Assembly: GCA_002269645.1 (NCBI GenBank)
Contig: NIVC01000067.1
Span: 248,001 to 312,000, forward strand
Direction: 5' to 3'
Length of the DNA stretch: 64,000 bases
Source of the DNA: Macrostomum lignano
Lineage: Eukaryota
Position 1 is the stretch's first letter, and every line of letters starts with the position of its first letter. The notes beneath the pieces were generated by a model. That model worked only from the letters and a program-made list of their open reading frames with translations. It searched no databases and had not been told where the DNA came from. Both the position numbers and the translations under genes were made by a program. Positions 27,482 through 51,600 of the stretch are shown piece after piece.

Positions 27482-29542
27482 TTGAGAAAGCTGAAAAAGG
27501 CGGCGGCAGATGCTGCGCCGAAGGTTTTTGCCAGCTCGAGCAACGCCTGGCACTCGCTCTCCTGTCCGGCTTCCGAGCTGAACCTTGGCGTCACTCTGGC
27601 CTGCGGGCAGAGCTTCCGCTGGCGCCAGCTGGAACAGGAGGGCTACTGGGCCGGGGTTCACGCCGATAAGGTGTGGCTTCTGCGGCGGCCCAGTGAGGCG
27701 TGCATCGAGTTTCAGGTGTGTCGTGATGTGATAGGGACTATTTTATCTTTAGTTGCAACCTGAGATACCAGATCCTGAGATTCCAGATCCTGAGCTTTCA
27801 GATCTTGGGTTTCCAGATCCCGAGATCCCAGATCCTGAGGTCCCAGATCCTGAGATCAAAGATCCTGAGATTCGAGATCCTAAGATCAAAAATCGTGAGA
27901 TCCCAGATCGTGAGATCCCATCTCATCGTGAGATTCCAGATCCTGAGATCCCAGATCCCGCGATTCCAGTTCCTGAGATCAAACAGATATCCTGAGATCA
28001 AAGATCCGGAGTTTCCGGATACTGAGATTTCAGATCCTAAGATAAAAAATCCTGAGATCCCAGATTGTGAGATCCCAGATCCCCAGTCATCGGCTAGTGG
28101 AATCCCAGATCTCCAGCCTGATCACACCCTGACTCCCATATTCTCAGCATTCGCCTGTCCCCTACAATCCGCAGGTCTATCCGCCATCCAGCAGCGCCGC
28201 CTCAGACCAGCAGGTGCTGGAGGACTATCTCCGATTGAACGGTCCCACCCTGGAGAGCCTGTACGCTGGTTGGAGCGCCTCGGACCCGGTGTTCCGCTCA
28301 GTATGCAGCCAGTTCCCTGACGTCCGCGTGCGCCTGTTACGTCAGCAACCGCTGGAGAATTTATTCAGCTTCATCTGCTCGTCTAACAACAATATTGCCC
28401 GGATTAGTCAGCTGGTTGAGAAATTGTGCAAATATTTTGGCCAGCAAATTTGCATTGTTGACGGCCGCGAGTACTATGGCTTTCCCCAGGTGAGCACCGG
28501 GAATCTAGGAGGTTATAGCCTACCCTATCAGCCCTAGGAATCCAGGGCAGCAGCACCCACCACCACATCATCGGTCCCAGGAATCCAGGGCAGCAGCACC
28601 TACCGCCACATCATCAGTCGCGGGAATCCAGGGCAGCAGCACCCACCACCCCATCATCAGTCGCGGGAATCCAGAGCAGCAGCACCTACCACCCCATCAT
28701 CAGTCGCGGGAATCCAGGGCAGCAGCACCCACCACCCCATCATCAGTCGCAGGAATCCAGGGCAGCAGCACCAACACCCCATCATCAGTCGCGGGAATCC
28801 AGGGCAGCAGCACCCACCACCCCATCATCAGTCCCAGGAATCCAGGGCAGCAGCACCCACCACCCCATCATCAGCCCCGGGAATCCAGGGCAGCACCCAC
28901 CACCCCAACAGCTCCACTGTTGCATGCCTCGCGCCTCGCCCCGCCGCTCTGCAGCTGTCGGCCCTGTGCTCACCAGAGGCGGAACCGCGCCTCCGCGAGT
29001 TGGGCTTCGGCTATCGCGCCAAATTTGTAGTCGAGAGCGCCAGGCGGCTGCTCGACCTGGGCGGCGCCGATTGGCTGCACAGCCTGCGCGGCTCGGCGCA
29101 GCCAGACGAGATCCGACGCTGCCTCACCAAAGAATTCACCGGGGTTGGCCGTAAAGTGGCCGATTGCGTCTGCCTGATGTCGCTAGACCAGCTGCACCTG
29201 GTGCCGGTGGATGTGCACGTGATGCGAATCGCTCGCAGCCTGTACGGCCTACCAGCCTGCACAAAGAGCCTGACCGAGTCGGCCTATCAATCAATTAGCG
29301 ACTTCTTCCCCAGCCTGTGGCAGCCGCACGCCGGCTGGGCGCACACCGTCCTGTTCGCTGCAGACTTGGCCAGATTCCAGCATTTGAAGTCGCCCGCCAT
29401 TGTTGATGAGGTCAAGCCGGCGTCATTATCGACTGAGACACCTGCCGACGCCGCCGCTGATGGCGAGGTTGAATCGAAGAAGCTCGAAGCTGAGAGGCCT
29501 CCTGCTAAATCCGGACAGGGAACTAGAAAGCGCAAGAGATAA
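27482..29542 (+). CDS. OGG1: 8-oxoguanine DNA glycosylase/AP lyase; exons 27482-27715, 28175-28489, 28955-29542; no in-frame ATG in the first visible exon
   Basis: ELNLGVTLACGQSFRW, RLLRQQPLENLFSFICSSNNNIARI, LGFGYRAK and the HhH-GPD motif GVGRKVADCVCLMSLD...VPVDVHV (catalytic Lys and Asp present), WAHTVLF, C-terminal RKRKR. Phase-0 GT-AG introns. Confidence 0.95.
27760..28095. repeat. Degenerate 15-bp GATC-rich repeat (GAGATCCCAGATCCT) in OGG1 intron 1
   Basis: Direct inspection. Confidence 0.85.
28535..28910. repeat. 43-bp minisatellite in OGG1 intron 2
   Basis: GGAATCCAGGGCAGCAGCACCCACCACCCCATCATCAGTCGCG ~8 copies. Confidence 0.88.
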
Positions 29543-31593: not shown

Positions 31594-34121
31594 TCATTCT
31601 CCGGGCACCTGAGTTTGCCTTGGAGCAATTGTACACGGGGCGTTGAAGCTGCCGCACTGCCAGTTGCCCTCGCTGTTCTTCGGCTTCAAGCAGATGAAGC
31701 AGAACTCTTGGCCGCAGATGCACTTCATATGCTTGCAAGAGCGAACATGCTCGATGATCATGCCGCAGTGGATGCAGGCGCGGCGACCGGGCACGTCTGG
31801 ATGCGTGATTTTGGGGATAAAACATTGTCTGGCTCTGGGGGGAGTTGTGTAGTGGACACATGTACTTTTGACAGAGCCAGCCACTGCTGCTCAAACTGTC
31901 TATGGTCCAAATAAACTAGAGCCGTAAAAGGCCCAGCCGCAGCACATTATTAAAGGACAAGCGGTCTTCATCTCGCCGCACACGAGCCGCTTCATACATG
32001 TATTTAATGCCACCTCCCTTAGCTTTAATGCTTGTCTCCCTACAGCAGAGGGTTTGTCTCAAGTCGAGAAGAGGGACCAGTGGTGCGAAGTCGTTCGATT
32101 TCGAAACTTGGCTTTATGCTTCATGTTGGGATTTTGGACTCAGGGTTAATTGATCTAACACAGTCTAACACGGTCTGATGACGAATATTACGTAGTGTCT
32201 GCGCGCGTATTCTTTGGCAGAGCAGCTCAGCGGTTAACGCCCTCGATTCTCCCACCAAACACCCTGGGTTCGATTTTGAGCGCGGCCTCATTAACAAGCC
32301 AACAAGCCATTTCTTCCGCCCGTCGAACTACCAAGGGGGGAATCCCCTGACAATTTTTTGCTGCGCCGTAAGGGAACCACGCAGGCACACGAAATTTATG
32401 AGCACGGGCTAACTTTCTGTTGTAAACCTTCTCAAACAAGAATCAAGTCGCCAGCCCTCCAGACCGTCGAGATATTCAACGATTTTGCCAGAAGGTCAGA
32501 TTTTTTCTAGCGTCGTAAAAGCGCTTGTGAATTCAATACATCCCGTGTGTGCCAATCAGCACTGCGCCTCAGAGCGGCCTTGCTAGACCTCCAGATTTCA
32601 TCAGGAAGTCAACCACATGCGTCTGCATCAGCTCTGACTTCGTTGGTCACTGGCCTTCACGCAGGCGGAGCTTCTGGATCCTCGACAGTGGGCAAGCCTA
32701 AACTGCAGGACATCATCAGCTGGTCTCTCAAGCATTCCGTCTTCACCCCGACGCCCCGAGGGTGAAAAGTCCTCCCTCCTGGTGCTCCCCCCTCCATACG
32801 CCCGTACTACGTCATACTTAAAGTGCACCCCCCTGCAGGCCAACTGACCCTTCACGCCGACAATCTCTTTGACCGGCGCCGCGGCCAGAATGGCAATCCG
32901 AGGGTCCTTGCCGGAGCAGATGTCATTGCCGCACTTGTCCGTGCCAGCACTGCGCCACTTGTTCAAGCAGTACCAGCAGAACTCGAAACGCTGCCTGCCT
33001 CCGCTGGAACAGGCGGGGCAGACCACGCGACGATCGCGCGAGCTGACGCGCTTGCAGTAGGAGTGACAGCTCGGGCACTCCTGTGTGAGGAACCGTTCGG
33101 AAATGAATCACTTTTAAAGCTGCCAGTTGCAACAGAAAACACGCTGTTAACGTTTGCGGCGTCACGGGATATCTGTCAGCTGACAATCTTGCATTTCTAT
33201 AAAGTATTAAGTTTCTTATAATCGAACGTTTCTTACCTGAATATTCACCGCCCGTCGCAAGTAGTTCTCGGAAATCTTTCGTTCAAACTCTTGCCTCTCC
33301 TCGTCGCTAAGCACGGCCAGCCGTCGTATAACGACGAAGTCCCATTCGACGGGGCAGCCAACTCTGGAATCGTTCGGGTCCAGCCAGGGGCAGAGGAAGC
33401 GGTAGAGGCCGGAGTCCAGCAGGCTGCGACAGTACATGGTGAGGCTGTCCGGTCCGATGGCGTGGCCGCAGGGCATTTTGACTCGCAAGTTGTCTTTGTC
33501 GTCGTCCCAGGTGATCATGTCCGGCTCCTCGGTGAGCTCAACGCAGTCGCCCAGCTCCTTGACACAGAATTATAGTTGCGTGCAAATATCAGAATCTAAG
33601 AATTTCAGAAGCCATACCAAATTCTGTGATGAACCGGTACAGGTATTACTCACTCTTAGTCTTGAGCCACCTGGTAGACGCAGCACCATGTGGAGATTGG
33701 CGTGATTCTCCAAGTGAAAGTCGGACAGATGCTTGTCTTTGTGCTGTTCAAAGTCGATAGTCTTGCTCGCGTAGACCATCTGGTAGGTGCCAGGTTCGAG
33801 TCCCGTCTTGTCCTCCAGCTTGCGAAACAGATCCTTGATCTGAGCATCCTATAGGTCGTGGAGAGTGCATTGCTTCATTTTTCTTTCACATCGTTACGGG
33901 GTTGGCACTGGATATGTTAGACTAAGAGAGCACGGATAATCCTTTGTTAGAACGGGGTTTGCCTGTGAACTGAAACTGCTCACTAGCTCTGGTCCTAATT
34001 GTTTTCCTCGTACAGGTAAGTACAAACAAAAGTAGGTGCTTATCATTCTTACCTTGAGAATGCTAACTGTCTCTGTGCGGCTGTTGTAATCCTTCCCGAA
34101 AATCTGTAATAAATTATCCAT
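31594..34121 (-). CDS. Ubiquitin-like domain + degenerate RING1 + IBR + Rcat (RBR-type E3 ligase), copy A, ~339 aa; exons 34121-34053, 33848-33654, 33557-33237, 33080-32849, 31796-31594
   Basis: Spliced ORF of 1020 nt with GT-AG junctions (phases 0,0,0,1). The Ubl ends NLHMVLRLPGG, followed by MPCGHAIGPDSL...FLCP...GC, IBR ECPSC...CPAC...FCWYC and Rcat CIHC...SCKHMKCICGQEFCFIC. Confidence 0.88.
32216..32290 (+). mobile_element. tRNA-derived SINE head inside RBR copy A intron 4
   Basis: GGCAGAGCAGCTCAGCGGTTAA...GGGTTCGATT...GCGGCCTCATT; related to 2538-2612. Confidence 0.4.
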
Positions 34122-34909
34122 TTTTACCAAGCTTATCAAGTACAAGTCAAAGGAAAACTTACATGTATTAACTCAGATTGCCAGTTTGACTCAACTAAAA
34201 GCCTGTGTCCTAGCTTTCTCGGTATAAATGCCTTTCTTTGCACAGTTTTCTGGCCTGTTACTAGGTACCATCTGTCTGCTACTGCTAATGTACATTCCAT
34301 TATCAAATAAGACTGTTCGTAGCTCCATAGCTCAAACACAACAAGCTAGGATGTACACTTTAAGAGCCACTACAATCACGGATGTAGGTACAACGATTGT
34401 ACAGCACTGGCGATGTGGGGCAACGCAGCTCTCTTTCCCTGAATTTCTATCGCAGTTCAGATCTGCTGCCCTCCGCTGCAGTGGGGTCACAACGAATCGA
34501 ACCCGGGACCACTGAGCAACCCACCTTAAATACAAGCATATCAACTGCGTACTAACCGCGACCAGTTCTGCTTAACAGATGATTTGAAAAAATGACTAAC
34601 TCAAAGTTTTTTTTTTGAGTGCAAATTTCGACTCGAACTAAAACGCGAATTTTAATGGAATTAAAGACGGTTACAGTTTAATTTATTTATCGCTTTGTCT
34701 CTTGATACACCGGAATATCAATAGTAAAATTCAAGTATGCAAGTACGAGCAGATGCAATTACTTAAAGTCAAACCAAACAGTCAACTAAAAAACTAAAAA
34801 CACACGGGTCACACATGTACAACCGTAACACTTCAAAACTAATAAAAAAATAAAATATTGATTTTTACTTGGGTGATTTTTACTGAAAAACAATTTACTC
34901 GATAATTTG

Positions 34910-37900
34910 CCATCACCAGCCCCCATCTCCCACAGATCCCCAATCTCAGCTCCCATCTCCCACAGATCCCCAATCTCAACTCCCATTTCCCACAGATCCC
35001 CAATCTCAGCTTCCATCTCCCACAGATCCTCAATCTCAGCTCCCGTCTCCCACAGATCCTCAATCTCAGCTTCCATCTCCCACAGATCCTCAATCTCAGC
35101 TCCCGTCTCCCACAGATCCTCAATCTCAGCTCCTATCTCCCACAGATCCCCAATCTCAGCTCCCATCTCCCACAGATCCTCAATCTCAGCTCCCATCTCC
35201 CACAGATCCTCAATCTCAGCTCCTATCTCCCACAGATCCTCAATCTCAGCTCCCATCTCCCACAGATCCCCAATCTCAGCTCCCATCTCCCACAGATCCC
35301 CAATCACAGCTCCCATTTCCCACAGATCCCCAATCTCAGCTTCCATTTCCCACAGATCCCCAATCTCAGCTCCCATCTCCCACAGATCCCCAATCTCAGC
35401 TCCTATCTCCCATAGATCCTCAATCTCAGCTCCCGTCTCCCACAGATCCTCAATCTCAGCTCCTATCTCCCACAGATCCTCAATCTCAGCTCCCATCTCC
35501 CACAGATCCTCAATCTCAGCTCCCATCTCCCACAGATCCTCAATCTCAGCTCCCATCTCCCACAGATCCTCAATCTCAGCTCCCATTTCCCACAGACCCT
35601 CAATCTCAGCTCCCGTCTCCCACAGATCCCCAATCTCAGCTCCCATCTCCCACAGATCCTCAATCTCAGCTCCCATCTCCCACAGATCCTCAATCTCAGC
35701 TCCCATCTCCCACAGATCCCCAATCTCAGCTCCCATACATCCCCAATCTCAGCTCCCATTTTCCACAGATCCCCAATCTCAGCTCCCATTTTCCACAGAT
35801 CCCCAATCTCAGCTCCCATTTCCCACAGATCCCCAATCTCAGCTCCCATTTTCCACAGATCTCCAATCTCAGCTCCCATCTCCCACAGATCCCCAATCTC
35901 AGCTCCCATCTCCCACAGATCCCCAATCTCAGCTCCCATTTTCCACAGATCCCCAATCTCAGCTCCCATTTTCCACAGATCCTCAATCTCAGCTCCCATC
36001 TCCCACAGATCCTCAATCTCAGCTCCCATCTCCCACAGATCCTCAATCTCAGCTCCCATCTCCCACAGATCCCCAATCTCAGCTCCCATACATCCCCAAT
36101 CTCAGCTCCCATACATCCCCAATCTCAGCTCCCATACATCCCCAATCTCAGCTCCCATTTTCCACAGATCCCCAATCTCAGCTCCCATTTCCCACAGATC
36201 CCCAATCTCAGCTCCCATTTCCCACAGATCCCCAATCTCAGCTCCCATTTCCCACAGATCCCCAATCTCAGCTCCCATTTCCCACAGATCCCCAATCTCA
36301 GCTCCCATTTCCCACAGACCCTCAATCTCAGCTCCCATCTCCCACAGATCCCCAATCTCAGCTCCCGTCTCCCACAGATCCCCAATCTCAGCTCCCATCT
36401 CCCACAGATCCTCAATCTCAGCTCCCATCTCCCACAGATCCTCAATCTCAGCTCCCATCTCCCACAGATCCTCAATCTCAGCTCCCATCTCCCACAGATC
36501 CCCAATCTCAGCTCCCATTTCCCACAGATCCCCAATCTCAGCTCCCATTTTCCACAGATCTCCAATCTCAGCTCCCATCTCCCACAGATCCCCAATCTCA
36601 GCTCCCATCTCCCACAGATCCCCAATCTCAGCTCCCATTTTCCACAGATCCCCAATCTCAGCTCCCATTTTCCACAGATCCTCAATCTCAGCTCCCATCT
36701 CCCACAGATCCTCAATCTCAGCTCCCATCTCCCACAGATCCTCAATCTCAGCTCCCATCTCCCACAGATCCCCAATCTCAGCTCCCATACATCCCCAATC
36801 TCAGCTCCCATACATCCCCAATCTCAGCTCCCATTTTCCACAGATCCCCAATCTCAGCTCCCATTTTCCACAGATCCCCAATCTCAGCTCCCATTTCCCA
36901 CAGATCCCCAATCTCAGCTCCCATTTCCCACAGATCCCCAATCTCAGCTCCCATTTCCCACAGATCCCCAATCTCAGCTCCCATTTCCCACAGATCCCCA
37001 ATCTCAGCTCCCATTTCCCACAGACCCTCAATCTCAGCTCCCATCTCCCACAGATCCTCAATCTCAGCTCCCGTCTCCCACAGATCCCCAATCTCAGCTC
37101 CCATCTCCCACAGATCCTCAATCTCAGCTCCCATCTCCCACAGATCCTCAATCTCAGCTCCCATCTCCCACAGATCCTCAATCTCAGCTCCCATCTCCCA
37201 CAGATCCCCAATCTCAGCTCCCATTTCCCACAGATCCCCAATCTCAGCTCCCATTTCCCACAGACCCTCAATCTCAGCTCCCGTCTCCCACAGATCCCCA
37301 ATCTCAGCTCCCATTTTCCACAGATCCCCAATCTCAGCTCCCATTTTCCACAGATCCCCAATCTCAGCTCCCATCTCCCACAGATCCCCAATCTCAGCTC
37401 CCATTTTCCACAGATCCCCAATCTCAGCTCCCATTTTCCACAGATCCCCAATCTCAGCTCCCATTTCCCACAGATCCCCAATCTCAGCTCCCATTTCCCA
37501 CAGATCCCCAATCTCAGCTCCCATTTCCCACAGATCCCCAATCTCAGCTCCCATTTCCCACAGATCCCCAATCTCAGCTCCCATTTCCCACAGACCCTCA
37601 ATCTCAGCTCCCGTCTCCCACAGATCCCCAATCTCAGCTCCCATCTCCCACAGATCCCCAATCTCAGCTCCCATTTCCCACAGATCCCCAATCTCAGCTC
37701 CCATTTCCCACAGATCCCCAATCTCAGCTCCCATTTCCCACAGATCCCCAATCTCAGCTCCCATCTCCCACAGATCCCCAATCTCAGCTCCCATACATCC
37801 CCAATCTCAGCTCCCATACATCCCCAATCTCAGCTCCCATTTTCCACAGATCCCCAATCTCAGCTCCCATTTTCCACAGATCCCCAATCTCAGCTCCCAT

Positions 37901-39075
37901 TTCCCACAGATCCCCAATCTCAGCTCCCATTTCCCACAGATCCCCAATCTCAGCTCCCATTTCCCACAGATCCCCAATCTCAGCTCCCATTTCCCACAGA
38001 TCCCCAATCTCAGCTCCCATTTCCCACAGACCCTCAATCTCAGCTCCCATCTCCCACAGATCCTCAATCTCAGCTCCCGTCTCCCACAGATCCCCAATCT
38101 CAGCTCCCATCTCCCACAGATCCTCAATCTCAGCTCCCATCTCCCACAGATCCTCAATCTCAGCTCCCATCTCCCACAGATCCTCAATCTCAGCTCCCAT
38201 CTCCCACAGATCCCCAATCTCAGCTCCCATTTCCCACAGATCCCCAATCTCAGCTCCCATTTCCCACAGACCCTCAATCTCAGCTCCCGTCTCCCACAGA
38301 TCCCCAATCTCAGCTCCCATTTTCCACAGATCCCCAATCTCAGCTCCCATTTTCCACAGATCCCCAATCTCAGCTCCCATCTCCCACAGATCCCCAATCT
38401 CAGCTCCCATTTTCCACAGATCCCCAATCTCAGCTCCCATTTTCCACAGATCCCCAATCTCAGCTCCCATTTCCCACAGATCCCCAATCTCAGCTCCCAT
38501 TTCCCACAGATCCCCAATCTCAGCTCCCATTTCCCACAGATCCCCAATCTCAGCTCCCATTTCCCACAGATCCCCAATCTCAGCTCCCATTTCCCACAGA
38601 CCCTCAATCTCAGCTCCCGTCTCCCACAGATCCCCAATCTCAGCTCCCATCTCCCACAGATCCCCAATCTCAGCTCCCATTTCCCACAGATCCCCAATCT
38701 CAGCTCCCATTTCCCACAGATCCCCAATCTCAGCTCCCATTTCCCACAGACCCTCAATCTCAGCTCCCGTCTCCCACAGATCCCCAATCTCAGCTCCCAT
38801 CTCCCACAGATCCCCAATCTCAGCTCCTATCTCCCACAGATCCTCAATCTCAGCTCCCGTCTCCCACAGATCCCCAAACTCAGCTCCCATCTCCCACAGA
38901 TCCCCAATCTCAGCTCCCATCTCCCACAGATCCCCAATCTCAGCTCCCATCTCCCACAGATCCTCAATCTCAGCTCCCATCTCCCACAGACCCTCAATCT
39001 CAGCTCCCATCTCCCACAGATCCCCAATCTCAGCTCCCATTTCCCACAGATCCTCAATCTCATACAGATCTCCCA
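34910..39075. repeat. 30-bp minisatellite (CAGCTCCCATCTCCCACAGATCCCCAATCT), ~4.1 kb, with higher-order structure, between the two RBR genes
   Basis: Direct tandem repetition; 23-bp deletion variants mark a 1006-bp higher-order period. Confidence 0.95.
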
Positions 39076-39150
39076 TTACCAGCTCCATCAAGTGTTCCAT
39101 CTCAAAGTCTTTATTCTCCGCCGCATCAGTCACGCCAGCAGAGATGCGCC

Positions 39151-42100
39151 TCACTCCCCGGGAACCTCGGTTTGCCTCGGTGCCACAGCGCATGGCTCCC
39201 TGTAGCTGCCGCACTGCCAGTTGCCCCTGTCGTTCTTCGGCTTCAAGCAGATGAAGCAGAACTCTTGGTCGCAGACGCACTTCATGTGCTTGCAGGCGGT
39301 CACGTGCTCGATGATCATGCCGCACTTGATGCAGGCGCGGCGGCCGGGCACGTCTGGAGACGAGATTATGGTTATAAAAATTGCACTTTAACGCTACTTT
39401 AACGAGTCTGTTGTTATTCCATGAGAATTTCGAATGGCACAGGTTTAGGTTTATAAAGAATTGCTAATTGCCCCGGTGACCTACCGGGCACGCCGACGAT
39501 CGTCTTGACCTTCGCCGCGGCCAGAATGGCGATCCGAGGGTCCTTGCCCGAGCAGATGTCGTTGCCGCACTTGGTCGTGCCCGGGGTGCGCCACTTGTTC
39601 AAGCAGTACCAGCAGAACTCGAACAGCCGCCCCTTGTCCGGCTCCGAGCACACCGGACAGATCATTCGGCGATCGCGACCGCTGCGGCGCTGGCAGAACG
39701 ACCTGCAGCCTGGGCACTCCTGCGGGGTTGAGAGCGAGTCTGAGTGTGTTAGTGTCTATCTGTCTGTCCGGGTGTCCATCTGTCTGTCTGTCTGTCCGGG
39801 TGTCCATCTGTCTGTCTGTCTGTCCGGGTGTCCATCTGTTTGTCTGGGTGTGTTAGTGTCTATCTGTCTGTCCGGGTGTCCATCTGTCTGTCTGTCTTTC
39901 CGGGTGTCCATCTGTCTGTCTGTCTGTCCGGGTGTCCATCTGTCTATCTGTCTGTCCGGGTGTCCATCTGTCTGTCTGTCTGTCCGGGTGTCCATCTGTC
40001 TGTCTGAGTGTGTTAGTGTCTATCTGTCTGTCCGGGTGTCCATCTGTCTGTCTGTCTGTCCGGGTGTCCATCTGTCTATCTGTCTGTCCGGGTGTCCATC
40101 TGTCTGTCTGTCTGTCCGGGTGTCCATCTGTCTGTCTGTCTGTCCGGGTGTCTATCTGTCTGTCTGGGTGTGTTAGTGTCTATCTGTCTGTCCGGGTGTC
40201 CATCTGTCTGTCTGTCTGTCCGGGTGTCCATCTGTCTGTCTGGGTGTGTTAGTGTCTATCTGTCTGTCCGGGTGTCCATCTGTCTGTCTGTCTGTCCGGG
40301 TGTCCATCTGTCTGTCTGAGTGTGTTAGTGTCTATCTGTCTGTCCGGGTGTCCATCTGTCTGTCTGTCTGTCCGGGTGTCCATCTGTCTGTCTGAGTGTG
40401 TTAGTGTCTATCTGTCTGTCCGGGTGTCCATCTGTCTTTCTGGGTGTCTCAGTGTCCATCTGTCTGTCTAAGTGTCTCAGTGTCCATCTGTCTGAATGCC
40501 TTAGTGCCCATCTATTTGGATGTCTTAGTGTCCATTTGGAAGTCTTAGTGTCCATTTGGATGTCTTAGTGTCCATCTGGGTGTCTTAGTGTCCATTTGGG
40601 TGTCTTAGTGTCCATTTGGATGTTTTAGTGTCCATTTGGGTGTCTTAGTGTCCATTTGGATGTCTTAGTATCCATTTGGGTGTCTTAGTGTCCATTTGGG
40701 TGTCTTAGTGTCCATTTGGGTGTCTTAGTGTCCATTTGAGTGTCTTAGTGTCCATTTGGGTGTCTTAGTGTCCATTTGGGTGTCTTAGTGTCCATTTGGG
40801 TGTCTTAGTGTCCATCTGGGTGTCTTAGTGTCCATTTGGGTGTCTTAGTGTCCATTTGGAAGTCTTAGTATCCATTTGGATGTCTTAGTGTCCATCTGGG
40901 TGTCTTAGTGTCCATTTGGGTGTCTTAGTGTCCATTTGGATGTTTTAGTGTCCATTTGGGTGTCTTAGTGTCCATTTGGATGTCTTAGTATCCATTTGGG
41001 TGTCTTAGTGTCCATTTGGGTGTCTTAGTGTCCATTTGGGTGTCTTAGTGTCCATTTGAGTGTCTTAGTGTCCATTTGGATGTCTTAGTATCCATTTGGA
41101 TGTCTTAGTGTCCATTTGGAAGTCTTAGTGTCCATCTGGGTGTCTTAGTGTCCATTTGGATGTCTGGGTGTCTGGTTGTCTGTCTGTGTGTTTTTGTACC
41201 TTTTGTAGCGTTTCTCTGCCATTACTTACCTGAATATTGACCGTCCGTCGCAGGTAGTTCTCAGAGATTTTGCGCTCAAACTCGCGCTTCTCAGCGTCGG
41301 TGAGCACGGCCAGCCGTCGCACGATCACGAAGTCCCACTCGGCGGGGCAGCCGACGCCCGCGTTGGCGGGGTCCACCCAGGGGCAGAGGAACCGGTAGCG
41401 CCCTGTGTCCAGCAGACTGTGGCAATAGCTGGTGAGGCTGTCCGGGCCGATGGCGTGGCCGCAGGGCATCTTCGCCCGCTTGCCGTCCTTGTCATCGTCC
41501 CAGGTGATCATGTCCGGCAGGTCGGTGAGCTCAACGCAGTCGTCTAGCTCCTGTGAGCACACAATTTTTCCTGGTCCGTGAGATTCTCTGGCTAGAACTT
41601 TTCTACCTTCTCTCAACAGGATTCCCCCACCGGGATTCTGCCACCGGGATTCTCCCACCGGGATTCTGCCACCGGGATTCTCCCACAGGGATTCTCCTAA
41701 CGGGATTCTGCCACCCGGATTCTGCCACCGGAGTTATCGCACCGGGATTCTCCCAACCGGAGTTATCCCACCGGGATTCTCCCACCGGAGTTATCCCACC
41801 GGGTTCTCCCACCGGGATTCTCCCACCGGAGTTATCCCACCGGGATTCTCCCACCTGAATTTTCCTACCGAGATTCTCCCTTTGGCACGTGGCGTCGGAG
41901 GGTGCTCTCGCTTCGCAGTGAACTCACCTTGGATCCGCCGTGCAGACGCAGCACCATGAAGAGATTGGAGTGATTCTCCAGGTGAAACTCGGTCAGGTGC
42001 TTGTCCTTGTGCTGCTCAAAGTCGATAGTCTTGCTCACGTAGACCATCTGGTAGGCACCCGGCTTGAGTCCTGTCTTATCCTCCAGCTTGCGAAACAGAT

Positions 42101-43135
42101 CCTTGATCTGGGCATCCTGCGCAAGAGCGGCGCGGTGGGTGTGGAATGTATCGTACCGGCGGTACCGGTATTGGATCGAAATGAATGTAGCAGGGCGGGG
42201 TTACTGCAGCTGAAGGAGAGGAGGGGGCCCAGCTGAAAGGGAGGGGGTCCAGCTGAAGGAGAGGAGGGGGCCCAGCTGAAAGGGAGGGGGTCCAGCTGAA
42301 GGAGAGGGGGTCCAGCTGAAGGAGAGGGGGTCCAGCTGAAGGAGAGGGGGTCCGGCTGAAGGAGAGGGGGTCCGGCTGAAGGAGAGGAGGGGGTCCAGCT
42401 GAAGGAGGGAAGGGGTCCAGCTGAAGGAGAGGAGGGGGTCCAGCTGAAGGAGGGAAGGGGTCCAGCTGAAGGAGAGGAGGGGGTCCAGCTGAAGGAGAGG
42501 AGGGGGTCCAGCTGAAGGAGAGGAGGGGGTCCAGCTGAAGGAGAGGAGGGGGTCCAGCTGAAGGAGAGGAGGGGGTCCAGCTGAAGGAGAGGAGGGGGTC
42601 CAGCTGAAGGAGAGGAGGGGGTCCAGCTGAAGGAGAGGAGGGGGTCCAGCTGAAGGAGAGGAGGGGGTCCAGCTGAAGGAGAGGAGGGGGTCCAGCTGAA
42701 GGAGAGGAGGGGGTCCAGCTGAAGGAGAGGAGGGGGTCCAGCTGAAGGAGAGGAGGGGGTCCAGCTGAAGGAGAGGAGGGAGTCCAGCTGAAGGAGAGGA
42801 GGGAGTCCAGCTGAAGGAGAGGAGGGGGTCCAGCTGAAGGAGAGGAGGGGGTCCAGCTGAAGGAGAGGAGGGGGTCCAGCTGAAGGAGAGGAGGGGGTCC
42901 AGCTGAAGGAGAGGAGGGGGTCCAGCTGAAGGAGAGGAGGGGGTCCAGCTGAAGGAGAGGAGGGAGTCCAGCTGAAGGAGAGGAGGGCGTCCAGCTGAAT
43001 GAGGGAAGGGGTCCAGCTGAAGGACAAAAACAGTATAAAAGTACATGTAGAGCCTAGCAAGCTCACCTTGTGAATATCTATAGTCGTGGTGTTGCCTTTG
43101 AAGCCGCGGACAAACAGTTGAATCAAATTTTCCAT
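39151..43135 (-). CDS. Ubiquitin-like domain + degenerate RING1 + IBR + Rcat (RBR-type E3 ligase), copy B, ~338 aa; exons 43135-43067, 42116-41928, 41550-41230, 39719-39485, 39353-39151
   Basis: Same exon/phase structure as copy A. Ubl MENLIQLFVRGFKGNTTTIDIHKDAQIKDLF...NLFMVLRLHGG; Rcat CIKC...ACKHMKCVCDQEFCFIC; AATAAA at 39115-39110 downstream of the stop. Confidence 0.88.
39740..41165. repeat. Compound array in RBR copy B intron 3: TCTG-derived ~24-mer grading into the 20-mer GTGTCTTAGTGTCCATTTGG
   Basis: Direct inspection. Confidence 0.9.
41620..41870. repeat. 14/15-bp repeat (GGATTCTCCCACCG) in RBR copy B intron 2
   Basis: Direct inspection. Confidence 0.85.
42200..43020. repeat. 23-bp minisatellite (CAGCTGAAGGAGAGGAGGGGGTC) in RBR copy B intron 1
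   Basis: Direct tandem repetition. Confidence 0.92.
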
Positions 43136-46085: not shown

Positions 46086-48389
46086 TCACTGAGCGGCGCC
46101 CGAAGCGGAGGCGGCGGTGGCGGCTGCGCTGCTCCGCTGTTTGAGCAGAGTCCAGTCAAAGGTGTAGTCGAACTGGTGATTGAGAGTGCGGAACAGGATC
46201 CGGAAGAGCTGTCTGAGGTACATATAGTCGGGAGCCTCCTCGAATCGAAGGCCGCGGCAATAGTTCAAGTACATGGTGAACTCGGCCGGGAAGCCTTTGC
46301 ACAGGGACTCGACTGGCGTTGACATCTTCTTCTCGCTGATCTTCTGGTACTTCTGCTTCTTGGTGTTGGCCTGCGGTTGGGAGTTATGGGAATTGAGGCT
46401 TTGGGATTGGGAATTAAGATAGTATATAGTGATGAACTGTGAGACATAAGCTATGAGCCGGGATTTATGAGCTATGATTTATTACCAATGATCATGGATT
46501 AATGAACTATGACCATAGATCTATGAGCTATGACCATGGATTTATGACCAATGACCATGGATTTATGACCAATGATCATGGATTAATAAACTATGACCAT
46601 AGATCTATGAGCTTTGACCATACATTTATGAGCTATGATCATAGATCTATGAGCTATGACCATGGATTTATGACCAATGACCATGGATTTATGACCAATG
46701 ACCATGGATTTATGACCAATGATCATGGATTAATGAACTATGACCATAGATCTATGAGCTATGACCATGGATTTATGACCAATGACCATGGATTTATGAC
46801 CAATGATCATGGATTAATAAACTATGACCATAGATCTATGAGCTTTGACCATACATTTATGAGCTATGATCATAGATCTATGAGCTATGACCATGGATTT
46901 ATGACCAATGACCATGGATTTATGACCAATGACCATGGATTTATGACCAATGATCATGGATTAATAAACTATGACCATAGATCTATGAGCTTTGACCATA
47001 CATTTATGAGCTATGATCATAGATCTATGAGCTATGACCATGGATTTATGACCAATGACCATGGATTTATGACCAATGACCATGGATTTATGACCAATGA
47101 TCATGGATTAATAAACTATGACCATAGATCTATGAGCTTTGACCATACATTTATGAGCTATGATCATAGATCTATGAGCTATGACCATGGGTTTTCTAGC
47201 CATGACCATAGATAAAAGCTATGAGCAATGGAGATGAGCAATAATCGGTGAATATGAAGCAACGTAGATGAATGAAACAAAGCCGCAAAGGATTTCACCT
47301 GCAGTCCCTGCCACGGTAGCGAGCCCCTATTAAAGTACATCAGCACGTAGCCAAGCGCTTCCATGTCATCGCGTCTGGACTGTTCGATGCCCAGGTGAGC
47401 ATTGATTGAAGCGTAGCGGGCCGTGCCAGTGAGGTTTTTGTCCTCGCTGCGGGAATTGAGTTCGGGACATTTTATACCAGACTAATCCATTAATCATTTT
47501 TAAATAACAGATCTCTTGATGACTAATCATATGCTCACCGGTAAGGGATGTGCTTTCCGGAACGACTATCGCGAAACTTTTTAGCCAATCCGAAGTCAAT
47601 GATGAACACCTGGCGCGGGCGGGCGGAAATCGATTTATAGGATTTCTTAGTTAAGGGATTAAGATTCTTCAATGGGAATAAGGAATTCGGATTATTGGGT
47701 TGGGACTTGGATTATTGCATTGGGGATTTGGGTTATTGGGTTTGGGATTTGGATTATTGGGTTAAGGACTTGGATTATTGCATTGGGGATTTGGGTTATT
47801 GGGTTGAGGATTTGGATTATTGGGTTGGGGATTTGGGTTATTGGGTTGGGGATTTGGATTATTGTGTTGGGGATTTGGGTTATTGGGTTGGGGATTTGGA
47901 TTATTGTGTTGGGGATTTGGGTTATTGGGTTGGGGATTTGGATTATTGTGTTGGGGATTTGGATTATTGGGTTGGGGATTTGGATTATTGTGTTGGGGAT
48001 TTGGATAATTGGGTTGGGGATTGGGATTTTTGGTTAAGGATTGGGGATAATTAAGCTGGGGAATGGGATTATTTGCACCCTCAGACTCACCTTGTTGCAG
48101 TGACGCCCGATTCCCATGAGGAAGTTGTCCGGCTTGATGTCGCGGTGAATGAAGTTTTTGTTGTGCACGTACTCGATGCGGTTGATCATCTGGTCGGCCA
48201 GCATCAGCACGGTCTTCATAGTGAACCGGCGAGAGCAGAAGCTGAACAGGTCCTCCAGGCTGGGGCCCAGCAGGTCCATCACCAGCACGTTGTAGTCCTT
48301 CTCTACACCGAACCAGCTGCGTGGGCGGGGAGACAGAGTGGGCACGGGTTCAGGACAATGGACAGGAAGTGTCAGGCAGACAGACAGAC

Positions 48390-48424
<35 letters not shown>

Positions 48425-48443
48425 GTCAAACAGACAGACAGAC

Positions 48444-48499
<56 letters not shown>

Positions 48500-48608
48500 G
48501 ACAGACAGACAGACAGACAGACAGAAGGACAGACAGAAGGACAGACAGACAGACAGACAGGACAGACAGACAGACAGACAGACAGAAGGACAGACAGACA
48601 GACAGAAG

Positions 48609-48682
<74 letters not shown>

Positions 48683-51600
48683 AGGACAGACAGACAGACA
48701 GCACAACAGCGCCAAGATCCCTCAGACTCACCGCACATGTGGAATGCCAATGCCGCCCTGCAGCAGCTTGTACAGTTTGCTTTCATACAGAAGCTGCGGA
48801 TGGCGCGCCTTCTGACTCTCCAGTTTTACAGCAATTTCCTTAGAAATAAAAAGAAGACACGCGTGTACTTTGTTGAGTTATATAAAACAGTCAATATAAA
48901 AAGATATAAATGCATATATTGTTTTATTTTAGATAAATTTCTAACAAATAAACCAGTATATGTTTGCATATTCGAAATAAGAAATAAGTGTATTATGTGT
49001 AATCTGAAAAAAAAACATTTACTTGGAAATGCATTTTGTAACCTTCTTAAGCATACTAAGCATATATTAGCAACCTAAAATATGGCCTAAAACCTAAAAT
49101 CATAGCACTATAGAATATGAGCTAATACTTTTATCTTTAACAATGTTCTTATACTAAAGCATTAAGCACTAGCTTTGCATGTAACTGTTCTGAATTTCAT
49201 GCCATATTAAGACAATAGTTCTAGGTTCATTATTATAATGGATATTTATTTAGGATATTATATTAGAGATTTGCAATTTATCTACAAAGCTGTTTGTTAA
49301 TGACTTTGCAGCCTCTAATACCGAATTTCAATCTTTGTTCAACTGCACATATAGAGCATTAACAATCGAACTACTTTAATAATGATTATTAGAATTCCTA
49401 GGATTTTAGGACCTCTACTGAGTAATTCCAAAGTAGACAATTTCAAAGAAATGGAAATCTCTAGATTACACCTAAACTAATAGAGCTATGAAATGCTATG
49501 AAAATGCTATTTTATAAGAAATATCTATCCACAAGAAGCCTATATATGATTATAGACTGATTTCTAATTGCCAAATAAGAGTTTTATAGCTTTTTGTTTA
49601 AATTACCTAAATTAGCTTACACAAAAATTCATAACTTAGACTTATTATTACTAGCCATTACTTTTAGCCTTTGGGTAGAAACTCAACTTAGGCTTTAAAA
49701 ATGGACCCCAAGTAACCTATAAGAAAGGTTTCCTATAAAAAGAAAAGTAATAAAAAAGTTACAAAACTTTTTGCATTTAAAATTTTCAACATTTTTGTAA
49801 AATATTTTGCCTATTAAGCATTATAATCATTTTTGCTCACAAACTTATTCTTTATAAATATTTCCAACAAGTTTTTACTATTTTTTAACTAATAGGCCTA
49901 TCTATGTCCAATCCAAAGTTAGGAAACACTGCTCTATGCACCATATACTGGAACTACACCTTTTTGCATTATTTTTTGATAAAACTACATTCAATTTCGG
50001 CAAACTGGATTTCATTTTTGGCATCAGCTATGGCCGCACATCTACATTGCATTCAAATTTGACAAACCAAAAACCAATTTTGACAAACTGCATTAAATTT
50101 TAGCAACTCAAGTTTCTATTTAGACAAACTGATATTCAAATTCAGCAAACTGGATTCAATTTTGGCATTGTATATTCAATTTTGGCAGCCTTTGAAAAAG
50201 GGCCTTTATTGTTGCAATGCTTCTTTAATAATTTCTGACATATTATATCATAAAAACATTTGTTTTTTGGTGTAAATTTGAATTTACAATGTAAGAAATC
50301 ACTTTTTTGGTCTATTGTATAATAGATTTAAGAGTGTGATGAAATGGCACAAATTTACAATAGTGAACTATTGTGATGCACTAGATTTTATATGCCAAGC
50401 ATATTTTCAGGTCTATTATACACTAGAAAAATCTAGCATATATATAAAGATTTAGGAATACAGTATTAACAAAAATATTTAGAGGAAAATGAAAAATTAT
50501 AACATAATATAAACTAATAATATATAAATTTTTCTTTCTATGACTACTATAGTTTAGATTGTATATTAGTGTATGCCAGGTTAAATGCCAAAAAATGATG
50601 AGACCTTATTTGTATGCTGGGTTTGTGTGCTAATATAAAAAAATTGTCATTTGACACAATGTATCTACTATTATGTATATTGCAATATACCTTGATATAT
50701 ACTGAAAAATGGTAAGACCCTTGTTGTATGCCGGGAAATCCTAGCGTACATGTATAAAGATAGTAATCAACTGTCATTTAGGGACTATTGTAGGAACTAT
50801 TAGGAATAGGACTTAGGGTTTAGGCTAAGAAATTAGGGAATTGTATTGTTATCAAAGTGTGGTGGAGTATAGCAGTTGTGGATAGCTGCACTCTTACAAA
50901 AAGCTACAAGCGCTTAAAGATAACAGTGCTGTGCAAAGGGCAAGTGTAGGCCACCCTAAAAGTCTGCTTCCACTTTAAAGGGGTTGTATGCTTTTATGTG
51001 GGGTGGGGTTGTATGCCTTTATCAATTACATTTTTAAATAAAGACATTTAAGAAGTTGCATAAGAGTGGGAAACTATGAGAATTGGCCAGAATAGAATTG
51101 AAATGATATCTAGAAGATATGGGAAGTGACAATGCAGATAGTTTCACAGGGACTTCATTGGGAAAATTTACTATAAATAAGCAAGGGATTAAACGTCTAA
51201 TCTTTATTTATTTTACTCTCTTTATACTAACTTTTGAATTGCTTAAACAACTAGTTTGCCAAATTATGCCAATTGCTTCTGCAAAAACTAGCTATGAATA
51301 GAGGCTAAGACTAAGCACTGCCATGACTATAGATTTATGAAGCTTAGCTTAGTTATACCATAGTGTCTCAGACTTATTCTCCCAGCTTGTAGCTTGCTTA
51401 TTTATATAAACATTAAAAATACAGTTATTAAATATAAAATTCTATGCTTAATTAGAAAATACCATCTAGGAGTATTCTACCTTGTTTGAGTTATTATTAC
51501 TCATATGTTAGACTCTAGTTAGTGGCTGGCTAGACCCTTATAACATGTCACTTCCTAACCTATGGTATAACTATAATATAAATATTTTTTCTTTTAGCTT

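What the first reader, a model, noticed from the sequence alone, without database searches (positions are those of the whole stretch)
31594..43135. Tandem pair of ubiquitin-like(LRLxGG)-RBR E3 fusion genes: a possible self-contained modifier + ligase module
Seen: two five-exon paralogues encode an ~85-aa Ubl that aligns with ubiquitin along its length (IQLFVR..GNTTTIDI..KDLFRKLEDKTGLKP..MVLRLHGG or LRLPGG), followed by RING-like, IBR and Rcat domains with the catalytic Cys-x-His (SCKHM/ACKHM). A phase-0 intron falls 2-4 codons after the di-Gly. Known: Parkin's Ubl lacks a cleavable di-Gly, whereas LRLRGG-ending precursors (ubiquitin fusions, ISG15) are cut by DUBs. Inference: the precursor may release a dedicated Ubl plus an active E3 that could conjugate it, or the Ubl may autoinhibit as in Parkin but be removable. 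There is no RING0, so this is not a Parkin orthologue.
Basis: partly seen in the sequence, partly recalled or inferred. Interest (0 to 1): 0.82.

Follow-up and report, generated by a model that had tools for sequence, protein, structure and literature searches.

The report
Ubiquitin-like domain fused to RBR ligase
Two neighbouring flatworm genes each encode a ubiquitin-like domain ending in a ubiquitin-type Gly-Gly, joined to a small RBR ubiquitin ligase; they belong to an old, widespread and apparently unstudied family in which that Gly-Gly is almost never lost, so the domain is probably cut off after synthesis.

Summary
Two intact five-exon genes lie on the minus strand (A 31594-34121, B 39151-43135; 76% identical proteins of 339 and 338 aa). 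All splice sites are GT-AG. Each encodes an 84-aa ubiquitin-like domain ending LRLPGG or LRLHGG, a short linker, and an RBR ligase with a catalytic Cys-Lys-His-Met.

The window is Macrostomum lignano. These genes are not a flatworm oddity. The same ~340-aa architecture occurs in hemichordates, amphioxus, cnidarians, molluscs, an annelid and glomeromycete fungi, always labelled "uncharacterized".

Across 75 full-length members the two glycines are invariant (74/74), and ubiquitin's R72, L73, R42 and K48 are about 90% conserved. The residue after Gly-Gly is never proline (0/115), and the linker that follows is highly variable in length. RING1 has lost one zinc site in the whole family. There is no RING0, NZF or Ariadne domain.

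Best reading (about 0.5): a precursor cleaved after Gly-Gly by deubiquitinases, giving a free ubiquitin-like protein and a minimal RBR ligase. The stronger idea, that the ligase conjugates its own modifier, is untested. The intron just after Gly-Gly is specific to Macrostomum. I found no paper describing the family.

The parts
39151..43135 (-). Gene B (338 aa): Ubl-GG-linker-RBR, five exons (43135-43067, 42116-41928, 41550-41230, 39719-39485, 39353-39151)
   Evidence: GT-AG at all introns, open frame; 99% identical to M. lignano BOX15_Mlig024150g1; single continuous alignment (9 gap positions) with the intronless RNA contig L006.
31594..34121 (-). Gene A (339 aa): paralogue of B (76% aa identity), five exons (34121-34053, 33848-33654, 33557-33237, 33080-32849, 31796-31594)
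   Evidence: 98% identical to BOX15_Mlig023095g1; dN/dS against B is 0.22 (Ubl) and 0.26 (RBR).
41934..43135 (-). B ubiquitin-like domain, residues 1-84 (exon 1, plus exon 2 up to Gly-Gly), interrupted by intron 1 (42117-43066)
   Evidence: aligned to ubiquitin 1-76; beta-grasp model, rmsd 1.2-1.5 A to ubiquitin.
41934..41939 (-). B Gly83-Gly84 codons (LRLHGG), followed by Ser-Lys and then intron 2
   Evidence: for coordinates; the two columns are Gly in 74/74 family members.
33666..33671 (-). A Gly83-Gly84 codons (LRLPGG), followed by Ser-Arg-Leu-Arg and then intron 2
41230..41550 (-). B exon 3: conserved acidic linker motif (ELDDCVELTDLPDMITWDDD), half-RING1 (PCGH...C...CP...C) and the RING1-IBR helix
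   Evidence: only C116, H118, C129, C142 and C154 are conserved, and there is no first Cys-x2-Cys in any member; secondary structure; aligned over about 230-250 columns with solved RBRs.
39485..39719 (-). B exon 4: IBR (BRcat) with eight conserved Cys (C195, C198, C214, C217, C229, C232, C244, C249) and a following helix
39151..39353 (-). B exon 5: Rcat (RING2), C279-C326, and a conserved C-terminal tail (APxQTxVPGE)
   Evidence: aligned to the HHARI RING2 structure 1wd2; profile E 2.6e-7; all Zn ligands conserved.
39292..39294 (-). B catalytic Cys292 codon (A-C-K-H-M); His294 at 39286-39288
   Evidence: aligns with the Cys of G-C-N-H-M in HHARI RING2. Cys 119/119, His 109/119 (Gln in the other 10).
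31735..31737 (-). A catalytic Cys293 codon (S-C-K-H-M); His295 at 31729-31731

Best explanation
Each gene makes one polypeptide: an 84-residue ubiquitin-like beta-grasp ending Arg-Leu-x-Gly-Gly, a flexible linker, and a minimal (about 250 aa) RBR-type ubiquitin ligase. I propose that this is a precursor. Cellular deubiquitinases recognise the ubiquitin-like fold and its RLxGG tail and cut after Gly84, as they do for ubiquitin in UBA52 and RPS27A, FUBI in FAU, and the Ubl of SDE2. This releases (i) a free Ubl with an exposed Gly-Gly and (ii) an RBR ligase that starts at Ser85. The ligase then works like other RBRs: its RING1-like domain binds an E2 carrying ubiquitin (or a Ubl), the cargo is passed to Cys292/293 of Rcat with help from His294/295, and from there to a substrate. 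Shown here: the gene structures, the domain order, the integrity of the catalytic and zinc-binding residues of IBR and Rcat, purifying selection on both halves, and near-absolute conservation of Gly-Gly and of ubiquitin's R72, L73, R42 and K48 positions across animals and fungi. Inferred: the cleavage itself, which enzyme does it, E2 use by the atypical half-RING1, and what the freed Ubl does (conjugated modifier, or simply a removable pro-domain or folding aid).
For: Gly-Gly is Gly in 74/74 full-length members. R72 is kept in 71/75, L73 in 70/74, R42 in 68/74, K48 in 68/75 and Y59 in 71/75, while the neighbouring R74 position is free (P, L, H, R, K) and mean column identity is only 42%. In a wider set of 141 family-like proteins, 115 have R-[LVMA]-x-G-G upstream of RING1. 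Most of the others are N-terminally truncated models, and only about 2-3 are real losses (P0143, P0153). The residue after Gly-Gly is never Pro (S 61, A 15, G 10, E 9 of 115), although Pro is the commonest residue two positions earlier (35/115). Ubiquitin-Pro bonds are the ones deubiquitinases cut poorly (established knowledge). The distance from Gly-Gly to the RING1 Cys-Gly-His ranges from 9 to 127 residues, including low-complexity inserts of roughly 100 residues in amphioxus paralogues. That fits a dispensable spacer rather than a fixed hinge. In the AlphaFold model the lowest-confidence 10-residue block is residues 81-90, around the Gly-Gly (pLDDT 69 against a mean of 89.9), so the site is predicted to be exposed. 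Integral, uncleaved Ubl domains (Parkin, HOIL-1, UHRF1, ubiquilins) do not keep Gly-Gly (established knowledge). SDE2 shows that an N-terminal Ubl ending PRLCGG in front of an unrelated protein is cleaved by deubiquitinase activity (PMC5131917). Catalytic Cys (119/119), His (109/119) and all IBR and Rcat zinc ligands are conserved. All 46 best Foldseek matches of the RBR-only model are RBR ligases. dN/dS is 0.05-0.26 for both halves.
Against: There is no direct evidence of cleavage: no proteomic or tagged-protein data. Conservation of the tail and hydrophobic patch would also be expected if the uncleaved tail docked in cis on the ligase. The Macrostomum Ubls are the most diverged in the family (28-33% identity to ubiquitin, R42 to Gln, Y59 to Phe, a 4-residue insertion, Pro or His at position 74), so what holds for the family may be weaker here. 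RING1 has lost one zinc site, so E2 binding is not assured. No E2, E1 or deubiquitinase gene lies in the window, and neighbours differ between species. The model's interdomain confidence (PAE) was not available, so a docked Ubl cannot be excluded.
Confidence: 0.5

Rival explanations
1. The Ubl is not cleaved. It is a built-in regulatory domain, as in Parkin or HOIL-1. It binds in cis to the RBR, either to the RING1-IBR allosteric ubiquitin site or, through its RLxGG tail, to the donor-ubiquitin groove near Rcat. This keeps the ligase off or on until a signal displaces it.
For: The best full-length Foldseek matches are Parkin structures with the Ubl included. The hydrophobic patch positions (L8, I44, V70) stay hydrophobic, and the Ser65 position is Ser in 64/75. 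Solved RBRs bind an allosteric ubiquitin or Ubl (structures listed: Parkin-pUb, RNF216-Ub, HOIL-1/E2-Ub/Ub). Conservation of the tail would also follow if the tail is a ligand.
Against: Known integral Ubls of RBRs have lost Gly-Gly, whereas here it is 74/74. The linker after Gly-Gly varies greatly in length (Gly-Gly to RING1 Cys-Gly-His 9-127 residues) and is low-complexity in some species. Proline is avoided exactly at the position after Gly-Gly (0/115), which has no obvious reason in an uncleaved protein. pTM does not rise when the Ubl is included (0.58 against 0.59), so there is no sign of confident docking.
Confidence: 0.3
2. The strong form of the first reader's idea: the released Ubl is a dedicated modifier, distinct from ubiquitin, and the co-translated RBR is its cognate E3, so modifier and ligase are made one-to-one and the ligase attaches this Ubl to targets. 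This is a sub-case of the cleavage model, so its confidence is part of the 0.5 given there and is not additional.
For: The E1-recognition determinants of ubiquitin (R72, R42) and Lys48 are conserved across the family, beyond what a mere spacer needs. The Ubl is never closer than 59% to ubiquitin, so it is a separate lineage kept for a very long time. The ligase has no other substrate-binding domain. The fusion is old: intron 1 inside the Ubl is shared by flatworm, hemichordate and amphioxus.
Against: Nothing here shows activation or conjugation. Deubiquitinase recognition alone could explain most of the conserved surface. In Macrostomum R42 is Gln. No dedicated E1 or E2 is linked. SDE2 shows that a cleaved Ubl need not be conjugated.
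Confidence: 0.15
3. The uncleaved N-terminal Ubl acts as a built-in degradation or proteasome-delivery signal (like non-removable ubiquitin fusions in the UFD pathway), or as a primed acceptor on which the ligase builds Lys48 chains, so that the enzyme limits its own lifetime.
For: The Lys48 position is kept in 68/75 members. The fold is ubiquitin-like with a hydrophobic patch.
Against: A degron does not need an invariant Gly-Gly or a non-proline next residue. Natural UFD-type substrates are mostly engineered. There is no supporting data here.
Confidence: 0.05

Closest known systems
Parkin (PRKN), an RBR ligase with an N-terminal Ubl
   Same: N-terminal ubiquitin-like domain followed by RING1-IBR-Rcat. 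Best full-length structural matches. Catalytic Cys-x-His in Rcat.
   Different: No RING0 or REP. Parkin's Ubl has no Gly-Gly and is not cleaved. Sequence similarity of the RBR part is marginal (profile E 9e-3, Rcat only). RING1 here lacks one zinc site.
Ariadne ligases ARIH1/HHARI and ARIH2/TRIAD1
   Same: Closest solved RBRs by sequence: ARIH1 Rcat E 2.6e-7, ARIH2 IBR-Rcat E 1e-6, ARIH1 RING1-to-Rcat E 0.015-0.02. ARIH2 is the top Foldseek match of the RBR-only model. Some database entries are named 'ARIH1-like'.
   Different: No Ariadne C-terminal domain, and no UBA-like or acidic N-terminal region. The protein ends about 12 residues after the last Rcat cysteine. It has a Ubl-GG instead. Identity is only about 20%.
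HOIL-1 (RBCK1): Ubl-NZF-RBR
   Same: A Ubl followed by an RBR; a small ligase; structural match over about 250 columns.
   Different: No NZF. The HOIL-1 Ubl binds HOIP and has no Gly-Gly. No detectable sequence match outside the zinc-finger pattern (HOIL-1 does not appear).
Natural ubiquitin or Ubl fusion precursors: UBA52 (Ub-eL40), RPS27A (Ub-eS31), FAU (FUBI-eS30)
   Same: An N-terminal ubiquitin-type domain ending in Gly-Gly, joined directly to an unrelated functional protein in one ORF. The best PDB sequence matches of the Ubl include these fusions aligned through the junction. The residue after Gly-Gly is not proline.
   Different: The partner is an enzyme of the ubiquitin system rather than a ribosomal protein. 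The Ubl is not ubiquitin (25-59% identity). A variable linker follows Gly-Gly. Cleavage is not demonstrated.
SDE2 (a Ubl-GG pro-domain removed by deubiquitinases)
   Same: A diverged N-terminal Ubl with an RLxGG-like tail (PRLCGG) in front of a functional protein. Cleavage at Gly-Gly activates the C-terminal part and the Ubl is not known to be conjugated (PMC5131917).
   Different: No sequence relationship. SDE2's partner is a DNA replication and splicing factor. Its Ubl carries a PIP box and the new N-terminus is Lys, whereas here it is mostly Ser, Ala or Gly.

Membership tests
RBR (RING-between-RING) E3 ligases | RING1 with the full C3HC4 cross-brace (eight ligands, two zinc ions) that binds the E2 | tested here: not met
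   Only C116, H118, C129, C142 and C154 are conserved in this region. The first Cys-x2-Cys and the Cys-x2-Cys after His are absent in all 122 aligned members, so at most one zinc site remains. The fold still aligns with RING1 of solved RBRs.
RBR (RING-between-RING) E3 ligases | IBR (BRcat) domain with two zinc sites | tested here: met
   Eight Cys conserved in at least 113/117 sequences (C195, C198, C214, C217, C229, C232, C244, C249). Pfam IBR gives two matched stretches, whole-protein E 1e-9.
RBR (RING-between-RING) E3 ligases | Rcat (RING2) with an active-site Cys followed two residues later by His, flanked by two zinc sites | tested here: met
   C279-x2-C282...C292-K-H294-M-x-C297-x-C299...C304-x2-C307...C319...C326, all at least 96% conserved. 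C292 aligns with the Cys of GCNHM in the HHARI RING2 structure 1wd2.
RBR (RING-between-RING) E3 ligases | Overall RING1-IBR-Rcat fold like solved RBRs | tested here: met
   RBR-only AlphaFold model has pLDDT 86.8. The 46 best Foldseek PDB matches are all RBRs (ARIH2, Parkin, HHARI, RNF216, HOIL-1, HOIP), the best about 35 over roughly 210-250 aligned columns. TM-scores are low (0.2-0.3) because the domain arrangement differs.
RBR (RING-between-RING) E3 ligases | E2-to-E3 thioester transfer activity | not testable with these tools
   Needs biochemistry with a Cys292 mutant.
Parkin subfamily | RING0 (unique Parkin domain) between the Ubl and RING1, and a REP element | tested here: not met
   Only about 30 residues lie between Gly-Gly and the RING1 Cys-Gly-His, with no Cys/His cluster. 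Profile similarity to Parkin is confined to Rcat (E 9e-3).
Ariadne subfamily | C-terminal Ariadne domain that covers the Rcat | tested here: not met
   The protein ends 12 residues after the last Rcat Cys. No Pfam hit beyond IBR and ubiquitin.
HOIL-1/RBCK1 subfamily | NZF zinc finger between the Ubl and the RBR | tested here: not met
   No such domain in sequence or in Pfam.
Cleavable ubiquitin/Ubl fusion precursors (UBA52, RPS27A, FAU, SDE2 type) | N-terminal beta-grasp domain ending in Gly-Gly, joined in frame to another protein | tested here: met
   Gly-Gly is conserved in 74/74 members.
Cleavable ubiquitin/Ubl fusion precursors (UBA52, RPS27A, FAU, SDE2 type) | Junction compatible with deubiquitinase cleavage (residue after Gly-Gly is not Pro; Leu73 kept) | tested here: met
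   Pro is 0/115 at that position. The L73 equivalent is kept in 70/74.
Cleavable ubiquitin/Ubl fusion precursors (UBA52, RPS27A, FAU, SDE2 type) | Actual endoproteolytic release of the Ubl | not testable with these tools
   Needs tagged expression or proteomics.
Conjugatable ubiquitin-like modifiers (type I Ubls) | E1 recognition determinants (ubiquitin Arg72 and Arg42) and a mature C-terminal Gly-Gly | tested here: inconclusive
   Family: R72 in 71/75, R42 in 68/74. In both window genes R72 is kept but R42 is Gln, and position 74 is Pro or His. Exposure of Gly-Gly depends on an unproven cleavage.
Conjugatable ubiquitin-like modifiers (type I Ubls) | Activation by an E1 and isopeptide attachment to targets | not testable with these tools
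   Needs in vitro charging, or a search for Lys-LHGG and Lys-LPGG remnants by mass spectrometry.

The most novel reading that the evidence does not exclude
The Ubl of this family is a so far unrecognised ubiquitin-like modifier that is always made as a one-to-one fusion with its own E3. After deubiquitinase cleavage, the minimal RBR, which has no other substrate-binding domain, takes this Ubl from an E2 and attaches it to targets. That would make a self-contained modifier-plus-ligase gene, kept since before animals and fungi split and lost in vertebrates, insects and nematodes.
Probability: 0.15. Interest if true: 0.85.

Novelty: new variant of a known kind. Interest (0 to 1): 0.55.

Why it matters
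RBR ligases and ubiquitin-fusion genes are both well known, but I found no description of a conserved gene family that joins a Gly-Gly-ended ubiquitin-like protein directly to an RBR ligase. If the Gly-Gly is cleaved, this is a further class of natural ubiquitin-type precursor, one whose partner is itself a ubiquitin-system enzyme. It would raise the question of whether a modifier and its ligase can be delivered as one gene product. The family also shows that an RBR can keep its IBR and catalytic Rcat intact for a very long time while RING1 has only one zinc site, which bears on how RBRs engage E2s. The proteins are small (about 340 aa), are modelled with high confidence, occur in organisms where RNAi and transgenesis work (M. 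lignano), and the key question can be answered with one western blot.

Tried and rejected
1. Parkin orthology is rejected: no RING0, and only marginal Rcat similarity.
2. The idea that the intron after Gly-Gly marks an ancient module boundary is rejected. It is absent in Ptychodera and Branchiostoma, and in Rhizophagus the protein-to-genome matches break at other places. Only intron 1, inside the Ubl, is shared.
3. The full-length profile search of 1.84 billion representatives was swamped by polyubiquitins because the Ubl was part of the profile. It gave about two dozen extra full-length relatives but no usable family size. An RBR-only profile would have been the better query.
4. The cluster look-up for ten divergent relatives returned no organism names, so their taxa remain unknown.
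5. NCBIfam gave nothing. Rfam and tRNA scans of the window were empty.
6. Nine literature searches on the gene ids, the Dictyostelium name, RBR subfamilies and Ubl/ubiquitin-RBR fusions found no description of this family. The Genome Biology RBR family review could not be retrieved under the DOI and PMC id I tried, both recalled from memory. Marin's 2009 survey of animal RBRs (reference 11 of PMC2904391) did not surface in any search and I did not try to retrieve it. A prior mention there cannot be excluded.
7. A linked E1, E2 or deubiquitinase: none in the window. An E2 gene lies about 10 kb upstream of the Ptychodera orthologue, but nothing comparable was seen at the other loci, so I treat it as coincidence.
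8. The long ORFs of 200-1432 aa between and within the genes are in-frame readings of minisatellites, not genes.
9. Pseudogene or assembly artefact is rejected: intact ORFs, canonical splice sites, purifying selection, the same pair in an independent assembly, and RNA support.

Full report
WHAT IS THERE. The finding's span holds two genes on the minus strand, separated by a large minisatellite. I built both gene models by hand from the sequence. Gene A has exons 34121-34053, 33848-33654, 33557-33237, 33080-32849 and 31796-31594 (339 aa). Gene B has exons 43135-43067, 42116-41928, 41550-41230, 39719-39485 and 39353-39151 (338 aa). All eight introns start GT and end AG, and the frames are open from ATG to stop. 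An AATAAA follows each stop by 74 or 36 nt. The two proteins are 76% identical.

A public RNA-derived contig (L006, run SRR28338164) contains an uninterrupted 1017-nt ORF that aligns in a single alignment (9 gap positions) with the spliced B coding sequence at 82% nucleotide identity. This independently confirms the exon junctions and shows that the ubiquitin-like part and the ligase part are translated as one protein.

ORGANISM AND LOCUS. The best database matches are Macrostomum lignano proteins BOX15_Mlig024150g1 (99% to B) and BOX15_Mlig023095g1 (98% to A). In assembly GCA_002269645.1 the same two genes lie in the same tandem order between a protein kinase gene and an OGG1-type glycosylase gene. 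The window is collinear with that contig at 92-98% identity but has longer minisatellites. The same neighbours are present in the window, together with a Bicaudal-D gene further along. No E2 was detected in the window by tblastn.

THE DOMAINS. Residues 5-85 of B align with ubiquitin over its whole length with one 4-residue insertion, and LRLHGG falls on LRLRGG (E about 1e-8 against single ubiquitin chains). Pfam's ubiquitin model is matched only below its cut-off (E 2e-3). Pfam IBR is matched significantly.

An AlphaFold2 model built on a 75-sequence alignment has mean pLDDT 89.9. Its N-terminal domain superposes on ubiquitin at 1.2-1.5 A, and the best full-length Foldseek matches are Parkin structures.

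A model of the ligase part alone (pLDDT 86.8) matches only RBR ligases among its 46 best PDB hits: ARIH2, Parkin, HHARI, RNF216, HOIL-1 and HOIP. The best about 35 of these span roughly 210-250 aligned columns. By sequence the ligase part is far from every solved RBR. A single-sequence search finds only the HHARI RING2 (E 7e-4). A family profile finds HHARI RING2 (2.6e-7), ARIH2 (1e-6), Parkin Rcat (9e-3) and RNF216 (0.03).

The Rcat pattern is complete and the active-site Cys aligns with the Cys of G-C-N-H-M in HHARI. The IBR has its eight cysteines. RING1 does not have its full set. In all 122 aligned relatives only C116, H118, C129, C142 and C154 are conserved, and the first Cys-x2-Cys pair is replaced by a strongly conserved acidic stretch (PDMITWDDD). 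At most one zinc site is left. There is no RING0, NZF or Ariadne domain, and the protein ends 12 residues after the last Rcat cysteine with a conserved A-P-x-Q-T-x-I/V-P-G tail.

THE FAMILY. A search of 5.8 billion proteins returned 133 relatives. The same ~340-aa architecture at 45-57% identity occurs in these groups:
- hemichordates (Ptychodera, Saccoglossus, Glandiceps);
- amphioxus (many paralogues);
- cnidarians (Actinia, Dendronephthya, Montipora, Desmophyllum);
- molluscs (Mytilus, Argopecten, Dreissena, Gigantopelta and others);
- the annelid Owenia;
- glomeromycete and related fungi (Rhizophagus, Glomus, Cetraspora, Jimgerdemannia);
- many unnamed transcriptome or metagenome sequences.

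No vertebrate, insect or nematode protein is among the named hits of the 120 listed. Source names are uninformative ("uncharacterized protein DDB_G0292642-like", "ARIH1-like", "UBC", "UBB"). An exhaustive profile search added more divergent members but was dominated by polyubiquitins. Intron 1, inside the Ubl between IHK and DA, is at the same position and phase in Macrostomum, Ptychodera and Branchiostoma, so the fusion is old.

THE GLY-GLY QUESTION. In 75 full-length members the two glycines are Gly in 74 of 74 sequences that have the column. Other ubiquitin positions are also well kept: R72 in 71/75, L73 in 70/74, R42 in 68/74, K48 in 68/75, Y59 in 71/75 and V70 in 68/75. The R74 position varies freely (P, L, H, R, K), and the alignment as a whole averages 42% column identity.

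In a broader set of 141 family-like proteins, 115 carry R-[LVMA]-x-G-G upstream of RING1. Nearly all the rest are N-terminally truncated gene models, and only two or three have really lost the motif. The residue after Gly-Gly is Ser, Ala, Gly or Glu in 95 of 115 and never Pro, although Pro is the commonest residue two positions before. The distance from Gly-Gly to the RING1 Cys-Gly-His ranges from 9 to 127 residues, with low-complexity inserts of roughly 100 residues in amphioxus paralogues, before the conserved K-x-L-D-x-x-V-E-L-T motif. In the model, the lowest-confidence 10-residue block lies around the Gly-Gly (residues 81-90, pLDDT 69). Both halves of the Macrostomum genes are under purifying selection (dN/dS 0.05-0.26).

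HOW IT MOST LIKELY WORKS. Ubiquitin-like domains that stay inside their proteins (Parkin, HOIL-1, UHRF1, ubiquilins) have lost the Gly-Gly. Domains that keep it are cut there by deubiquitinases: ubiquitin in UBA52 and RPS27A, FUBI in FAU, the precursors of NEDD8 and ISG15, and the Ubl of SDE2. This is established knowledge, and for SDE2 it is documented in PMC5131917. In this family the Gly-Gly has been kept since before animals and fungi diverged. Proline is avoided at the next position, and an unconstrained spacer follows.

I therefore think the most likely mechanism is a precursor that is cleaved after Gly84, giving a free Ubl and a minimal RBR ligase that starts at Ser85. The ligase would then work by the usual RBR route through Cys292 (confidence about 0.5). 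The cleavage, the E2 used by the half-RING1, and the fate of the Ubl are all inferred, not shown.

The main rival (about 0.3) is that the Ubl stays attached and regulates the ligase in cis, as in Parkin. Conservation of the tail and hydrophobic patch is compatible with that. The proline avoidance, the free linker length and the lack of any gain in model confidence with the Ubl present argue against it.

I give it about 0.15, and that figure is included in the 0.5 rather than added to it. It fits the conservation of R72, R42 and K48 and the absence of any other substrate-binding domain, but nothing here tests it. In Macrostomum itself the Ubl is among the most diverged of the family (28-33% identity to ubiquitin, R42 to Gln, Y59 to Phe).

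COMPARISON WITH KNOWN SYSTEMS AND NOVELTY. It works like an RBR ligase and is homologous to them. It is not a member of the Parkin, Ariadne or HOIL-1 subfamilies, because each one's defining accessory domain is absent. It also fails the strict RING1 definition, so I describe it as a distinct RBR lineage with a half-RING1. In gene design it resembles the ubiquitin and Ubl fusion precursors and SDE2.

Nine full-text searches found no paper on it. The Genome Biology RBR family review could not be retrieved under the identifiers I recalled. Marin's 2009 survey of animal RBRs (reference 11 of PMC2904391) did not surface in any search and I did not try to retrieve it, so an earlier mention cannot be ruled out. 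I rate it a new variant of a known kind. It is not categorically new, and it is not a flatworm novelty, but it is a coherent, old and apparently unstudied family with a simple decisive experiment.

VERDICT. Interest is 0.55. A ubiquitin specialist would find the invariant Gly-Gly in front of an RBR notable and readily testable, but fusion precursors and Ubl-RBR ligases are each familiar, and the proteins already sit, unnamed, in the databases.

Noticed in passing
window 34917-39062: A 4.1-kb minisatellite (30-bp unit, about 140 copies, 94% matches) fills the space between genes A and B, starting 89 bp downstream of B's stop. The same locus in assembly GCA_002269645.1 has only about 0.9 kb of it, so its length differs between copies or assemblies. 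Because 30 is a multiple of 3, it produces spurious ORFs of up to 1432 aa on both strands.
   Followed up: partly
window 42207-43024, 41608-41880, 39738-41165: Introns 1, 2 and 3 of gene B consist largely of minisatellites (23-bp, 14-bp, and 8/28/76-bp plus 20-bp units). The paralogous introns of gene A are short (204, 96 and 156 bp) and repeat-free. The window as a whole has more than 30 such arrays.
   Followed up: no
window 16102-16878 and 19658-20704 (+); about 28538-29539 (+); about 46500-52100 (-): Neighbouring genes: Bicaudal-D exons (Pfam BicD E 8e-43 and 4e-68), an OGG1 / HhH-GPD glycosylase, and a protein kinase. A kinase exon at 47182-47481 contains a peptide ([27 protein letters not shown]) that looks casein-kinase-I-like to me, from memory rather than from a test. 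None of them points to a dedicated ubiquitin-system partner.
   Followed up: partly
window about 34480-34530 and about 32215-32290 (minus-strand reading): Two tRNA-like fragments with a GGTTCGAATC-type B box, one upstream of gene A and one inside its intron 4. They look like tRNA-derived SINE remnants. ARAGORN calls no tRNA and Rfam has no match.
   Followed up: partly
window 34053-34121 (gene A exon 1): The window's copy of gene A differs from the annotated protein P0003 at 7 residues, including Val9 to Gly and Phe12 to Tyr in the first beta-hairpin of the Ubl. Exon 1 is also the least conserved part between A and B (about 10 of 23 residues identical by eye, against about 53 of 61 for the exon-2 part of the Ubl).
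   Followed up: no
L002 1-463 (Ptychodera flava CM083788.1): An E2 (UQ_con) gene lies about 10 kb upstream of the Ptychodera orthologue P0004, and a large alpha-2-macroglobulin/complement-type gene lies downstream. No comparable linkage was seen at the Macrostomum, Branchiostoma or Rhizophagus loci.
   Followed up: partly
proteins P0047, P0049, P0092 (Branchiostoma); P0105; P0170, P0180: Variants within the family. Some amphioxus paralogues have roughly 100-residue Gly/Asn/Thr-rich inserts directly after Gly-Gly. One amphioxus protein combines leucine-rich repeats with the Ubl and IBR. Two unnamed relatives have two Ubl domains in tandem before the RBR; in P0170 only the first ends in Gly-Gly.
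   Followed up: no
proteins P0067, P0079 (M. lignano, UniRef): Further M. lignano entries 84-86% identical to gene A start at MPCGH (truncated models). This suggests additional paralogous or homeologous copies of the family elsewhere in this partly duplicated genome.
   Followed up: no
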